Source: Auanema rhodensis (taxonomy: Eukaryota > Animalia > Nematoda). From it: a stretch of 64,000 bases of DNA. Each line of letters begins with the position of its first letter. The first letter of the stretch is position 1. The stretch lies in the NCBI GenBank assembly GCA_964057225.1, contig OZ059895.1:7688001-7752000 (forward strand), written 5' to 3'. Positions 19,669 through 23,409 of this stretch are shown here, one piece after another. The notes beneath the pieces are model-generated. The model was not told where the DNA came from. It searched no databases and saw only the letters and a list, made by a program, of their open reading frames with translations. The position numbers and the translations under genes were made by a program.

Positions 19669-20229
19669 TTACTTTCCCATAAAACTCATCATACCCTTGA
19701 GAACTGACATTCCACGTTCTACAAAGGAACCACTTTCCTAAATCCATATCAATTTTCTCTTTTGAAGAAAAACTACTAACCACCATATTGCCACCGTTGC
19801 ATCGATCGCCATCATTGCAACAACAAAAGGTTACATTTTTATCCGCAATTACTTGTTCGAAGCATTTGTTTCCATTAAACTATAAAATGAGTCTTTGTCC
19901 TTATACAAAAAAAAAATAATACTTGACAAATCATTGTATTACATCCAGCAGTTTGGAGAACACTAAAAGAAGTTACATGAGCAGTAGCATTATAGCAATA
20001 GTCAGACTCCTTTCCACATTTCTTAGTATCAGATCCAATGGTTCCTCCTGTATTTAAATCTCTGATCAATGTGGTACACAAAATTAATATAGTATTATCC
20101 AACACGCATGTTTAAGCTTTCACTTTGAGTTTTACCTTTAACAACAGAATAACCATTATAGCACTCAAGAACAGCTAAGGATTCTAATACAAGAAGAAGG
20201 ATCAGAAAAGAAGGCAGAAAAATACGCAT
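19669..20229 (-). CDS. Small secreted 10-Cys three-finger (Ly6/uPAR-like) protein, paralogue B
   Basis: Signal peptide MRIFLPSFLILLLVLESLA, then LECYNG...CGKESDYCYNATA...GCNTMIC...KC...FCCCNDGDRCN. Four exons; Cys spacing matches paralogue A. Confidence 0.85.
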
Positions 20230-20476
20230 TTCGTGAAGAGCCTTACCGTTACACGTACAAGACGAAGAATTTTATAATGGCAGTATCACTGTTACACTGC
20301 GTTCAACTTCGACTAAAATATTGACTATGACAATTCTGTGACAACAATTAGTCTTCAACTTCATATTCCTTCGTTTTTTGCGTAGTGAACTGGGAACTAA
20401 CAACATATTTTTGGAACAATATTATTTTGAAACAAACGAATATATAACAAAAGCGTACAACACGAGAAGATAAAAA

Positions 20477-21355
20477 TTACGAAGCTTTAGGAGGCAATAA
20501 ATCAATACCATCTTCATTAACCTCGTCAACGTCACCAGCTCCCCAAAGACCTTCTAGATCATAACGGGCTCGAAGATCAGCACTCATAACGTGAACTTGA
20601 ATAGATCCTATAGCGACTTGAAACCAACCAAAGCCATTACGAACAGAACGCTTAGACACCTCAATAAAAATAATTAACGGATTTATCAAGTGTAAAACTC
20701 ACTGCTTCGTCAGACAAACGAGCAGACTTTCGAAGTGCATCTGCCATTGCGAAGCCATGTCGAGGATTGAAAGGGCTACATATTATCTAGAAGTCAGATG
20801 AAAATAGCATCAAAGAATACTACTAACCAATGTTGTGAAAAAGGTAGGCCCATCTTTCCCTAGTTCTAGCACCACGATGTCGGCTGCTTTCTCTTCATTT
20901 AAAAAGTTATAAATATCATCAAGAGAAGATAATCTATAAAAACAATGTATATATGGGAAAGTTGTATTGCAAATATACGTTGTCTCTTGCACTTCTTTCG
21001 CAGGTTTAAATTCTAATTCCTCTTTGGTGGAGTCTTCGTAATATTCTTCAACATACTGATTGAAATATTCTTGCATTTGCTTTATACGTTGTTCGGGAGT
21101 TAGAGATGAGGATGAAAAGAACTTTACAGAAGAATAACTACAATGAATATTCAATACTATATACGAGGAAGAGCAAGATTCATTTTACCTTATTTTTCTA
21201 CATTGCAAGGGGGTTTGTATGGATGGTAATGTTTTTAATTCTAAAAAACAGAAACTAATGGCATTTTAAGAGTATAACCAACCTCTGCTCAATAACTGGC
21301 CGATACTTGGCATCAACTTTGATGTTTTCCAATTCATCAAGCGCATCGAAGCCAT
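20477..21355 (-). CDS. MALSU1: Mitochondrial assembly of ribosomal large subunit protein 1 (RsfS/Iojap family); N-terminus overlaps PPIL3
   Basis: RsfS motifs FLNEEKAADIVVLEL, IMCSPFNPRHGFAMA, WFQVAIGSIQVHVMSADLRARYDLEGLW. The start at 21355 is inferred (see findings); the fallback start is the Met near 21076. Confidence 0.8.
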
Positions 21356-21921
21356 CGATAACTCTAAACAAATGTCATAACGATAAATATCTAAACATTT
21401 CACTCACTTTCCGAAAATTGTATATTTCAAGTCAAGATGTGGTTGCTTAGCGTAAGTTATGAAAAACTGAGACTTGTTGGTATTTGGACCGTTATTGGCC
21501 ATAGACAGGATACCACGAGCGTTATGCTAGAACAAAATCAGAATGTATAAAATATTACACAAATACCTTTAAATCAGGGTTGAGCTCGTCTTCAAAAGGA
21601 ACTCCCCAAATACTGTTTCCACCTTTCCCTGAACCACTTGGGTCTCCTGTTTGGACCATAAAATCTTTTATATTTCTGAAATACACTAATATTGAGAAAA
21701 CTAAACATTTAATTAACCTATGAAATATGTTATCTTTATAATAATCAGATGCACACAGGGCCAAAAAATTCTGAAATTATTAATTATCAAACGTTATCAA
21801 CGTACTACGGAGGCTATTATTTACTAAATTTGTTAAATCTTACCTCACAAGCCTTAGGACAATCCTCACAAAATAATTCAATTTTAATATCACCTGTGGT
21901 GGTATGCAACGTTACAGACAT
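21198..21921 (-). CDS. PPIL3: Peptidyl-prolyl cis-trans isomerase-like 3 (spliceosomal cyclophilin; C. elegans cyn-10 type)
   Basis: [37 protein letters not shown]...[15 protein letters not shown]...[37 protein letters not shown]...[10 protein letters not shown]. Confidence 0.95.
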
Positions 21922-22171
21922 AAGCAAACTAAGATTGTATTCAGTATTTTTCTTATTTAGATAGCGCTTATCTAAACCCTAACTATGCAAAATTCGTATT
22001 TTTAAATTTTAACTATCGTAAAAACAGTGCAGTTCAACGCAAAAGAAGCTGTTGACGCAAACAAGGTGTTATGGACATGTTGAACTGTTCAATACATGAC
22101 GCATCATATGATTCTGATTTTCACATTTCTCATTTCTTTATTCATTTTAAATTGAGTCATGAAAATTTATA

Positions 22172-23409
22172 TTAATCCATAATGTGGCAAGCTGGTCGTC
22201 CTGGCTCCCAATCATAAGGATATTCTTGTGTTCCCGTTGACATCATTGCTCGGCGCAAGAGCTGAACAAATTTTACAATAGCAACACTAGTTTGTAATTC
22301 ACTCACCTGGTATATTTGTTGATAATTTGGAGTATCGTAATATCTTAATGAATCTATGTGAGACAGACATTCACTGATTTCTCGTGGGCAACCATGAGGA
22401 AACAATTCGTGCGCAAACTGTTGAGATCGAACCCGACGCTTGTATTCACCAACCTTAGTCATATAACTTATATATCTTTGAGCTGCAATTACCTGATTCA
22501 TTTCATGACAATTGCTCCAGGGTACACGACCATACATGAGCTCTATTTGCATGTACAACCAGGATTCGACATCGTCTTTCCTAAAAATGACTTCACGTTT
22601 TGTGTTTGTATATCACTTTTACACACCGGCATAGTTCTTTTTGCATGTGACACATGATTGAAGCATATCTAACAGTCCCTCTAAAACCTGCAGCTTGTCT
22701 TGGTCTTCTTATAACGCCCTGTGTTTGTGCTATGTATCATAAGTATTTTACTCTTTTGTTTTACTTGTTCGTTAGTGAATTTACGGCACATTCCGAAATC
22801 CAAGATATAAACTACCCGAATCTCTCCTAACTCCTGTCTACCTATAGCATAGTTTCCGGGTTTGACATCTCTGTGTATGTATCCAATGTTGTGCAAATCT
22901 AAAAATATTTGGTAATCATAACTGTTTGTGCAACTTCACCTTCCAGTGCTTCTAATGCTTGAATTCCAACCGAAAGCGAACATCCCATTGTCATATGACC
23001 ACCAGGGCCAGCTTTACTGAGGTCCTACAATGTTTTCGAAATTGTGATAAGTTGAGAATAATTATAAACCTGTAGACACTTTGATACCAATGTCATTACG
23101 ACATAATTAAAGTTGCCAAATCTTCCCCTATCTTCAATCTTACAAAAATGACGTGACGATCTCTTTGTCAATTCTGTGAGTACATGTACTTCAAGTTTAA
23201 GAAGCTGAAATTATAAAACTATATTATAATCGTTTGTTATATTAATGAACCTGGATTTCTGCGTTAACAGCCTCTACTTTTAAGGCAAACGATTGCCCAG
23301 ACATATCTCTAACTTTGTAAACTGCTCCAAAACTTCCTTCTCCAAGTTTTTTTTCTATAACAAAGCGATCTACTTGAGTTCCAATTGGCGGATGCACAAT
23401 TTGAGCCAT
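22172..23409 (-). CDS. Tau-tubulin kinase / casein kinase 1 family Ser/Thr kinase (nematode-expanded TTBK-like)
   Basis: LGEGSFGAVY, ALKVE, LKLEV, IHRDVKPGNYAIG, ILDFG, FRGTVRYAS, KDDVESW; short C-tail YPYDWE. Confidence 0.9.

What the first reader, a model, noticed from the sequence alone, without database searches (positions are those of the whole stretch)
21138..21363. Dual-coding exons: MALSU1's mitochondrial presequence appears to be written in the +1 frame of the PPIL3 cyclophilin C-terminus, with a splice-versus-polyA switch
Seen (minus strand): the last two PPIL3 exons (21363-21283 and from 21240) encode [27 protein letters not shown]|[13 protein letters not shown] (stop 21200-21198). 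Their +1 frame has an ATG at 21355, 8 nt after the acceptor TTTAG|. It stays open across the same 42-nt intron and past the PPIL3 stop to a donor AAG|GTAAAA at 21189/21188. A 51-nt intron (21188-21138) then joins it in frame to the MALSU1 body, giving [58 protein letters not shown].... This N-terminus is R/K/S/L-rich with one acidic residue in about 55 aa. The +1 frame is closed by stops in the preceding exon. The ATG at 21183 hits a stop after 8 codons, and the only other in-frame Met (about 21076) would give an acidic N-terminus with no presequence. An AATGAA lies at 21184-21179, inside the 51-nt intron. Established: MALSU1 is a mitochondrial matrix protein that normally carries a cleavable presequence; AATGAA is the commonest variant poly(A) signal in C. 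elegans; nematodes can SL trans-splice at internal 3' splice sites. Inference: one pre-mRNA yields either PPIL3 (cis-splicing plus intronic polyadenylation) or MALSU1 (SL trans-splicing at 21363 plus removal of the 51-nt intron). That would be a mutually exclusive two-gene unit with about 116 nt (38 codons) of overlapping code, where a targeting peptide arose by overprinting a conserved enzyme domain.
Basis: partly seen in the sequence, partly recalled or inferred. Interest (0 to 1): 0.92.

Follow-up and report, generated by a model that had tools for sequence, protein, structure and literature searches.

The report
Two overlapping genes on one nematode mRNA
In this nematode and at least nine others, one spliced mRNA carries the cyclophilin PPIL3 and, starting inside PPIL3's last coding exons in the +1 frame, the mitoribosome assembly factor MALSU1, so MALSU1's mitochondrial-looking N-terminus is written over the enzyme's C-terminus.

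Summary
Spliced RNA contigs from four runs (one study) remove the predicted 51-nt intron (21188-21138). They join all PPIL3 exons to all MALSU1 exons in one ~1.2 kb contig. That mRNA holds a 160-aa PPIL3 ORF and a 218-aa MALSU1 ORF that starts at ATG 21355 in the +1 frame, with 116 nt of overlap.

The layout is old. RNA contigs of nine other nematodes (strongylids, a panagrolaimid, ascarids) and two genomic loci (Nippostrongylus, Mesorhabditis) show the same +1 overlap of 50-116 nt. One contig runs from SL1 to the poly(A) tail. Three species have no other Met before the RsfS domain.

Instead, out-of-frame ATGs are purged from PPIL3 upstream of the MALSU1 start: 1 seen against 29-41 expected over ten species. 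The MALSU1 body serves as control, with 112 seen against 92 expected. This is the signature of leaky scanning or reinitiation on one bicistronic mRNA.

I found no paper describing this. Many public gene models wrongly fuse the two proteins. I class it as a new member of a known kind (MOCS2-like overlapping bicistron).

The parts
21922..22053 (-). 5' leader of the transcript as assembled (no ATG in it); true 5' end and SL status not resolved
   Evidence: RNA contigs reach 22006-22053; ATG list
21844..21921 (-). PPIL3 coding exon 1; start ATG 21921 lies in a weak context (C at -3, T at +4)
21718..21770 (-). PPIL3 exon 2
   Evidence: joints; splice sites
21567..21675 (-). PPIL3 exon 3 (contains in-frame Met 21659)
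21283..21363 (-). Dual-coding exon 5. PPIL3 frame reads [27 protein letters not shown]. The +1 frame holds the MALSU1 start ATG 21355 and further ATGs at 21346, 21337 and 21313
21241..21282 (-). 42-nt intron shared by both reading frames
   Evidence: joint 21240/21283 in 4 runs
21189..21240 (-). Dual-coding exon 6 (52 nt). PPIL3 ends at TAG 21200-21198; the MALSU1 frame runs on to the donor AAG|GT
21138..21188 (-). 51-nt GT..AG intron joining the PPIL3 terminal exon to the MALSU1 body. It contains AATGAA (21184-21179). No contig depth inside it
   Evidence: joint 21137/21189 in 4 runs; bin depths equal the exon fraction only
20979..21137 (-). MALSU1 exon: end of the presequence-like extension, Met 21076, acidic EYFNQYVEEYY motif
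20828..20933 (-). MALSU1 exon (RsfS domain, N-terminal part)
20703..20786 (-). MALSU1 exon (RsfS domain, conserved CSPFN.RHG)
20381..20659 (-). MALSU1 last exon: RsfS C-terminal part, stop TAA 20479-20477, 3' UTR to about 20381-20414

Best explanation
PPIL3 and MALSU1 form an overlapping bicistronic gene. One pre-mRNA is cis-spliced, including the 51-nt intron just after the PPIL3 stop, into one mature mRNA with two ORFs. The 5' ORF is PPIL3 (160 aa). The second ORF is MALSU1 (218 aa). It starts at AUG 21355, or at the AUGs just after it, in the +1 frame of PPIL3's last two coding exons. Its first 38 codons are therefore written over the cyclophilin C-terminus. Together with the next ~20 codons they form a basic, hydroxyl-rich, nearly acid-free N-terminus of the mitochondrial-presequence type. 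Shown here: the splicing, the two ORFs, their overlap, and their conservation across nematode clades III-V. Inferred: ribosomes reach the MALSU1 AUG on the same mRNA by scanning past the weak-context PPIL3 AUG. That could be leaky scanning; in some species it could be helped by a 4-5-codon uORF that overlaps the PPIL3 AUG and allows reinitiation downstream. Also inferred: the unit probably arose from a PPIL3-MALSU1 operon whose trans-splice acceptor (21138) became a cis acceptor once a donor appeared after the PPIL3 stop. I put the overlapping-ORF architecture at about 0.9 and scanning/reinitiation as the main access route at about 0.6.
For: One spliced contig per run (4 runs) carries all nine joints from PPIL3 exon 1 to the last MALSU1 exon. 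Its ORFs are PPIL3 (160 aa) and MALSU1 (218 aa), with 116 nt of overlap. The genome holds only one RsfS locus and no second copy of the region.

Annotated MALSU1 proteins of Necator, Nippostrongylus, Parelaphostrongylus and Cylicocyclus begin with the same +1-frame peptide. Nippostrongylus and Mesorhabditis genomic loci have the same exon layout, with an intron 45 nt and 0 nt after the PPIL3 stop.

RNA contigs of nine other species all carry PPIL3 plus a +1 overlapping MALSU1 ORF. L011 runs from the SL1 22-mer to a poly(A) tail. L011, L021 and L024 have no Met between the PPIL3 stop and the RsfS domain.

Out-of-frame ATGs upstream of the MALSU1 start number 2 (one of them inside a Nextera adapter) against 41 expected. 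With permutation inside the region alone the figures are 1 against 28.6. The MALSU1 body as control shows 112 against 92.

No A at -3 of the PPIL3 AUG in 6 of 6 complete species, and in-frame Met50 is lost in two lineages. The first 40 residues hold 0-2 D/E and 3-7 K/R in all ten species.
Against: All RNA evidence is from k=31 de Bruijn contigs. These prove each junction but not that single molecules span both ORFs, and they drop minor SL-joined or polyadenylated forms. The window's four runs come from one study. Scanning ribosomes would have to pass the PPIL3 AUG and one or two conserved in-frame AUGs (21659, 21502), which should be costly. The MALSU1 AUG context is itself weak (T at -3). Synonymous divergence in the overlap is not depressed. 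D/E avoidance in the overlap is only modest, 3 against 7.9 expected. No translation, import or N-terminal data exist. The alt AUG lies 8 nt after a 3' splice site, a typical position for a trans-spliced start.
Confidence: 0.62

Rival explanations
1. MALSU1 is made from a separate mRNA created by SL trans-splicing at the exon-5 acceptor (21363). PPIL3 mRNAs end by polyadenylation inside the 51-nt intron (AATGAA 21184-21179). The two products are then mutually exclusive outcomes of one pre-mRNA. The overlap and the presequence are as in the best explanation; only the access route differs.
For: ATG 21355 lies 8 nt after a good 3' splice site. In ascarid and panagrolaimid relatives the first alt ATG lies in the stretch that corresponds to the start of the window's exon 6, but their exon boundaries were not checked in genomic DNA. 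AATGAA is present in the intron and AATGAA precedes the poly(A) tail in L011. Contigs cannot exclude minor forms.
Against: No loose SL end at 21363 or 21138 and no contig depth in 21153-21188 in 4 runs. Ten contigs of one relative all start within PPIL3 exons 1-3, none at exon 5. One relative's contig runs SL1-PPIL3-MALSU1-poly(A). The purge of out-of-frame AUGs over the PPIL3 region that this mRNA would lack is unexplained.
Confidence: 0.18
2. A PPIL3-MALSU1 fusion protein. It would be made either by a +1 ribosomal frameshift near the PPIL3 stop or by skipping the 52-nt exon 6. Skipping puts exon 5 in frame with the MALSU1 body, as several public gene models assume.
For: Exon 6 is 52 nt (1 mod 3), so skipping it gives an in-frame fusion. 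At least 10 annotated proteins in strongylids, Mesorhabditis belari and Steinernema carry Pro_isomerase plus RsfS.
Against: The fused models use a different junction in each species, and even within Ancylostoma ceylanicum, as gene predictors do when forced to keep one ORF open. Every RNA contig of 10 species keeps the exon-6 sequence and the PPIL3 stop. The alt frame always has its own AUG, often right after an alt-frame stop. An N-terminal cyclophilin would bury the targeting signal. A fusion does not predict the AUG purge.
Confidence: 0.05
3. An ordinary operon. MALSU1 mRNA is SL trans-spliced at 21138 and translated from Met 21076 without a presequence. The cis-spliced join and the open +1 frame would be by-products.
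For: Met 21076 (MQEYF) is in frame and conserved in some species. Several database models start there (P0008, P0010, P0031).
Against: The frame upstream of that Met is open for at least 60 codons in all 10 species. The Met is absent (S, K or A) in Necator, Nippostrongylus, L011, L021 and L024. The resulting N-terminus would be strongly acidic for a matrix protein. No SL end is seen at 21138.
Confidence: 0.04

Closest known systems
MOCS2 (MOCS2A/MOCS2B) overlapping bicistronic mRNA of animals, translated by leaky scanning (own knowledge; bicistronic MOCS genes are discussed in PMC9607355, seen)
   Same: Two conserved, unrelated-fold proteins sit on one mature mRNA. The ORFs overlap by tens of nucleotides in different frames. 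The downstream ORF is reached by scanning past the first AUG.
   Different: Here the two proteins do not share a pathway: PPIL3 is a cyclophilin (its human homologue is solved in spliceosome structures, own knowledge) and MALSU1 is a mitoribosome assembly factor. The overlapped part encodes a targeting peptide. The mRNA is SL1 trans-spliced at its 5' end in relatives. An intron lies just after the first stop.
Human POLG/POLGARF dual-coding mRNA (PMC10742948, listed)
   Same: An overlapping second ORF on a nuclear mRNA, with access by leaky scanning or reinitiation that involves uORFs.
   Different: POLGARF is a young, lineage-specific overprinted ORF near the 5' end. Here the second ORF is an ancient conserved gene and only its N-terminal extension is overprinted.
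INK4a/ARF (CDKN2A) and GNAS XLalphas/ALEX (own knowledge)
   Same: Shared exons are read in two frames to give two unrelated proteins.
   Different: Those rely on alternative first exons or promoters. Here no alternative 5' end was found, and both ORFs lie on the same assembled mRNA.
Nematode operons (SL2-type and SL1-type) and the rare unprocessed dicistronic mRNAs of C. elegans such as exos-4.1~tin-9.2 (own knowledge, not verified here)
   Same: Two genes share one promoter in a nematode. The downstream acceptor at 21138 looks like a former trans-splice site. The upstream mRNA is SL1-capped in relatives.
   Different: The intercistronic region is removed as a cis intron instead of being cut by polyadenylation and trans-splicing. 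The ORFs overlap. No separate downstream mRNA was detected.

Membership tests
Overlapping bicistronic (dual-coding) eukaryotic mRNA read by leaky scanning/reinitiation | Both ORFs lie on one mature, spliced mRNA | tested here: met
   One contig per run carries all joints. L011 runs from SL1 to poly(A). Caveat: these are k=31 contigs, not single molecules.
Overlapping bicistronic (dual-coding) eukaryotic mRNA read by leaky scanning/reinitiation | The ORFs overlap in different frames and both encode conserved proteins | tested here: met
   +1 overlap of 116 nt here and 50-116 nt in 9 other species. Pro_isomerase and RsfS by Pfam.
Overlapping bicistronic (dual-coding) eukaryotic mRNA read by leaky scanning/reinitiation | AUG-free path to the second start and a weak context at the first AUG | tested here: met
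   Out-of-frame ATGs: 1-2 seen against 29-41 expected; control 112 against 92. No A at -3 in 6 of 6 species. However, 1-2 in-frame AUGs remain.
Overlapping bicistronic (dual-coding) eukaryotic mRNA read by leaky scanning/reinitiation | Both proteins are actually translated from the same mRNA | not testable with these tools
   Needs ribosome profiling, reporters or proteomics.
Nematode operon with trans-splicing between cistrons | The upstream gene is polyadenylated and the downstream gene is SL trans-spliced into a separate mRNA | tested here: inconclusive
   No SL end at 21138 or 21363 and no depth in the intron, but contigs lose such ends.
PPIL3 (cyclophilin J) orthologue | Single cyclophilin domain of ~160 aa, closest to PPIL3 among cyclophilins | tested here: met
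   160-aa ORF. Pro_isomerase on three exons. Best PDB matches 1xyh/2oju PPIL3, E ~5e-19, against 3e-13 or weaker for other cyclophilins.
MALSU1 / mitochondrial RsfS (iojap) | RsfS domain | tested here: met
   PF02410 E 2e-6 on the last exon. Orthologue P0026 matches human MALSU1 chains 5ool_u. Single locus in the genome.
MALSU1 / mitochondrial RsfS (iojap) | Cleavable N-terminal mitochondrial presequence | tested here: inconclusive
   Composition fits: 7 K/R, 1 D/E and 8 S/T in the first 40 aa, and the same in 9 relatives. No predictor or import assay was available.
Programmed +1 ribosomal frameshift (antizyme-like) | The second ORF lacks its own start codon and is entered from ORF1 | tested here: not met
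   Every species has 2-4 AUGs in the alt frame, in four species directly or one codon after an alt-frame stop.

The most novel reading that the evidence does not exclude
An obligate, ancient (nematode clades III-V) translation unit in which two unrelated housekeeping genes are expressed from one SL1-capped mRNA with overlapping ORFs. The second ORF would be reached by leaky scanning or uORF-assisted reinitiation across ~370-450 nt kept free of out-of-frame AUGs. It would have arisen when an operon's trans-splice acceptor was captured as a cis acceptor, and a mitochondrial presequence was then overprinted on a conserved enzyme's C-terminus. That would be the first conserved non-operonic polycistronic translation unit described in nematodes.
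Probability: 0.5. Interest if true: 0.78.

Novelty: new member of a known kind. Interest (0 to 1): 0.66.

Why it matters
1. Annotation. Public nematode gene sets treat this locus inconsistently. Some give chimeric cyclophilin-RsfS proteins, each with a different invented junction. Others give MALSU1 truncated at an internal Met. Only a few give the overlapping start. Recognising one rule would correct models in many parasite genomes.

2. Evolution. This is a clean natural case of a targeting peptide created by overprinting a strongly conserved enzyme segment. The start codon slides between four D/H/N-codon-derived ATGs in different lineages. It probably shows how a nematode operon can collapse into a cis-spliced bicistron.

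3. Translation. The near-total purge of out-of-frame AUGs over hundreds of nucleotides, in ten species whose synonymous sites are saturated, is a strong and testable signature of scanning-dependent access to a second ORF on a trans-spliced nematode mRNA. Leaky scanning is little documented in that setting.

4. Physiology. The unit would couple the output of a cyclophilin (by its PPIL3 homology likely nuclear) to that of a mitoribosome assembly factor.

Tried and rejected
- Depressed synonymous divergence in the overlap: not seen. Codon identity is ~0.3-0.7 in the overlap against ~0.4-0.65 upstream.
- The +1-stop avoidance test across relatives is partly circular, because the overlap is defined as stop-free. 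I use it only for the window (P 0.01) and as a contrast with the non-overlap region, where observed stops match expectation.
- D/E avoidance in the overlap is only a modest trend, 3 against 7.9 expected.
- RNA structure of exon 5: z -0.99, nothing.
- Rfam on 20200-22200: no match.
- Second copy of the locus or a second RsfS gene in the genome: none.
- Literature: PPIL3+MALSU1, iojap+cyclophilin+nematode, K12H4.2 and dual-coding/elegans searches found nothing on this locus.
- The look-up of encoding contigs for P0001: not on record.
- Search with P0047 to reach Caenorhabditis: only itself, so the state in Caenorhabditis rests on the Toxocara protein's name 'K12H4.2' and my own knowledge.
- Pfam on the upstream gene's last exon: no hit.
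- Earlier scan notes: nothing relevant.
- Chance or artefact reading: rejected given RNA joints in 4 runs and conservation in 10 species.
Full report
ANATOMY. Read on the minus strand, the locus is a six-exon cyclophilin gene. Its ATG is at 21921 and its exons end or begin at 21844, 21770-21718, 21675-21567, 21526-21408, 21363-21283 and 21240. The stop is TAG 21200-21198. Four exons of an RsfS-domain gene follow: 21137-20979, 20933-20828, 20786-20703 and 20659 onward, with stop TAA 20479-20477. All introns are 40-73 nt with GT..AG ends. Pfam places Pro_isomerase on the upstream exons (best E 4.5e-14) and RsfS on the last exon (E 2e-6). Exon 4 matches human PPIL3 structures best (1xyh/2oju, E ~5e-19, against 3e-13 or weaker for other cyclophilins). 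An orthologue of the downstream protein matches human MALSU1 chains. The genome (181 Mb, 112 contigs) carries thousands of canonical SL1 22-mers in tandem arrays, so it is a nematode. It has no second copy of this locus and no second RsfS locus.

The +1-frame ATG at 21355 lies 8 nt after the exon-5 acceptor. The frame stays open through exons 5 and 6, past the PPIL3 stop, to the donor AAG|GTAAAA. The 51-nt intron 21188-21138 restores the frame into the RsfS body. A +1-frame stop lies in exon 4. The ATG at 21183 is abortive. Met 21076 and AATGAA at 21184-21179 are as described. With the PPIL3 protein held fixed and synonymous codons redrawn, only 1% of draws leave the 38 overlapping codons free of +1 stops.

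RNA EVIDENCE. The only public runs holding the stretch are four runs of one 2019 study, kept as contigs. In each run a single ~1.2 kb contig lies on the locus with nine GT..AG joints. It runs from 22006-22053, upstream of the PPIL3 ATG, through every PPIL3 exon. It crosses the 21189/21137 joint, where the 51-nt intron is removed, and continues through every MALSU1 exon to 20374-20414. The joints show that this is spliced RNA. Bin depths over 21153-21233 equal exactly the exon fraction of the contig's depth, so no contig covers the intron. No loose (SL-like) ends are reported at 21363 or 21138. The reconstructed mRNA has two long ORFs: PPIL3 (160 aa) and a 218-aa MALSU1 starting at 21355, with 116 nt of overlap. 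Caveat: contigs built from 31-mers prove each junction but not single-molecule continuity, and they lose rare ends.

CONSERVATION. A search with the last MALSU1 exon, followed by named homologues, showed several things. MALSU1 proteins annotated in Necator, Nippostrongylus, Parelaphostrongylus and Cylicocyclus begin with M(A/D)SM...-type peptides, which are the +1 translation of the cyclophilin motif [11 protein letters not shown]. Parascaris MALSU1 begins with the +1 translation of DVIIHANPI. At least ten other gene models (Haemonchus, Ancylostoma, Trichostrongylus, Dictyocaulus, Angiostrongylus, Mesorhabditis belari, Steinernema carpocapsae and others) fuse Pro_isomerase and RsfS into one protein. 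Each uses a different junction, which is the mark of predictors forcing one ORF onto a two-ORF transcript.

GENOMIC LOCI AND RELATIVES' TRANSCRIPTS. The Nippostrongylus locus (L010) has the same ATG at GAT|GGC, a PPIL3 stop, 15 further alt-frame codons and then a ~60-nt intron. In Mesorhabditis spiculigera (L026) the donor sits right at the PPIL3 stop (TAG|GT) and the intron is 37 nt. RNA contigs of nine further species were fetched: strongylids L011-L024, L025, the window's nearest relative L027, a panagrolaimid-like L028/29, and ascarid-like L030/L031. Every one carries the PPIL3 ORF and, in the +1 frame, an overlapping MALSU1 ORF. The overlap is 50-116 nt. L011 starts with the SL1 22-mer 12 nt before the PPIL3 ATG and ends in a poly(A) tail, so it is a complete SL1-PPIL3-MALSU1-poly(A) mRNA. 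Nine other contigs of that species start at scattered points in PPIL3 exons 1-3, and none starts at exon 5.

THE START CODON SLIDES. The start moves between four ATGs that arise from D-, H- or N-codons followed by G. In L023 it directly follows an alt-frame TAG. In L011, L021 and L024 no other Met exists between the PPIL3 stop and the RsfS domain, and the Met equivalent to 21076 is S, K or A in several species. The start must therefore lie inside PPIL3.

PRESEQUENCE CHARACTER. In all ten species the first 40 residues hold 0-2 acidic and 3-7 basic residues and many S/T/L, whereas the mature body is 19-23% acidic. In the overlap itself D/E are fewer than synonymous redraws predict (3 against 7.9) and K/R are more frequent (35 against 27). 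This is a modest trend. The +1 frame of this cyclophilin segment seems intrinsically suited to the role. Sequence conservation of the peptide is low and synonymous divergence is not depressed. That fits a signal defined by composition rather than by sequence. Import itself is untested.

HOW MALSU1 IS REACHED. I found no trace of either, though contigs cannot exclude them. A different signal appeared. In the window mRNA the 367 nt from the PPIL3 ATG to ATG 21355 contain no out-of-frame ATG, and the 132-nt assembled leader has no ATG at all. All four NAY-G dipeptide sites use the C-ending codon, while 13 of 19 other NAY codons end in T. The same holds in all ten species. The observed total is 2 out-of-frame ATGs, one of which lies in Nextera adapter sequence at the end of L023. 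Expected are 41 from locus codon usage, or 1 against 28.6 by the conservative permutation confined to the region. The MALSU1 body on the same transcripts shows no depletion (112 against 92).

WHY THE PURGE COUNTS. Codon identity between lineages is near saturation, so the lineages are close to independent. The PPIL3 AUG never has A at -3, and position +4 is T or A. The conserved in-frame Met50 has been replaced in two lineages. Four of six complete transcripts also carry a 4-5-codon uORF whose AUG lies 5 or 8 nt before the PPIL3 AUG. It is in the +1 frame and stops just after the PPIL3 AUG, a layout that lets ribosomes bypass that AUG and reinitiate downstream. A purge of AUGs between the 5' end and a downstream start is the classical footprint of scanning-dependent access. 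A trans-spliced MALSU1 mRNA lacking that region would not explain it. Against scanning: one or two in-frame AUGs remain, and the MALSU1 AUG context is weak.

RIVALS. A fusion protein could arise by skipping exon 6, which would be in frame because the exon is 52 nt, or by a +1 frameshift. It is disfavoured by the constant presence of exon 6 and the PPIL3 stop in RNA, by the alt frame's own AUGs, and by the need for an N-terminal signal. A plain operon with trans-splicing at 21138 and a start at Met 21076 is refuted by relatives that lack that Met and by the long conserved open extension.

COMPARISON AND NOVELTY. The nearest known systems are the overlapping bicistronic MOCS2 mRNA and POLG/POLGARF (leaky scanning), and INK4a/ARF or GNAS (shared exons read in two frames). 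In nematodes the nearest are operons and the rare unprocessed dicistronic mRNAs. The kind is known; this member is not. Six literature searches found no description of it. In C. elegans the MALSU1 orthologue (K12H4.2, the name carried by the Toxocara hit) is, to my knowledge, not next to cyn-10. The linkage has therefore been lost there, which may be why it went unnoticed. I classify the finding as a new member of a known kind. It has unusual features: two ancient unrelated genes, an overprinted targeting peptide, a likely operon origin, and conservation across clades III-V.

LIMITS. No raw reads, no SL-anchored or 3'-end data, no ribosome profiling and no targeting predictor were available. 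No negative-control PPIL3 from an unlinked species could be fetched.

Noticed in passing
L011:32-46, L021:9-23, L025:36-53, L030:128-142: A 4-5-codon mini-uORF (MVCQ*, MLCP*, MELCP*, MLCR*) has its AUG 5 or 8 nt before the PPIL3 AUG, in the +1 frame, and ends just after it. It is shared by strongylid and ascarid-like transcripts but absent from the window and from L028. In L030 a longer uORF ends in UGAUG right at this uAUG.
   Followed up: partly
G000:C3:6741531-6766485 and C3:14134320 onward (L001-L008): The canonical SL1 22-mer occurs 3451 times in the genome, mostly in tandem arrays with a 252-bp period (and a 341-bp period at a second site on the same contig as the window).
   Followed up: no
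P0016, P0017, P0018, P0021, P0022, P0023, P0027, P0028, P0037, P0040, P0044: Public gene models in at least ten nematode species fuse cyclophilin and RsfS into one 250-440-aa protein. Each uses a different junction, and two different ones occur within Ancylostoma ceylanicum. They are likely annotation artefacts of the two-ORF transcript.
   Followed up: partly
L021 and L028 (PPIL3 codon ~50): The conserved active-site-region Met of FMVQTGDP is replaced in two lineages (V in the Angiostrongylus-like sequence). This removes one in-frame AUG between the PPIL3 start and the MALSU1 start.
   Followed up: partly
P0045 versus P0042/L028: Panagrolaimus sp. ES5 MALSU1 (P0045) is very similar to the panagrolaimid-like P0042 through the body, by eye on the sequences. 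Its N-terminus is unrelated and does not overlap PPIL3. This is either a second solution in that genus or a model error.
   Followed up: no
window 22073-22500 (minus strand): The upstream neighbour's last exons (intron 22262-22306, stop near 22172, AATAAA near 22141) are transcribed at much lower contig depth. They end about 150-200 nt before the PPIL3 ATG. Whether this neighbour forms an operon with PPIL3-MALSU1 is open. Pfam gave no hit for its last-but-one exon.
   Followed up: partly
window 20135-20295: Another spliced transcript begins or ends about 90-250 nt beyond the MALSU1 3' end. Its contigs continue into sequence outside the laid stretch at 20135.
   Followed up: no
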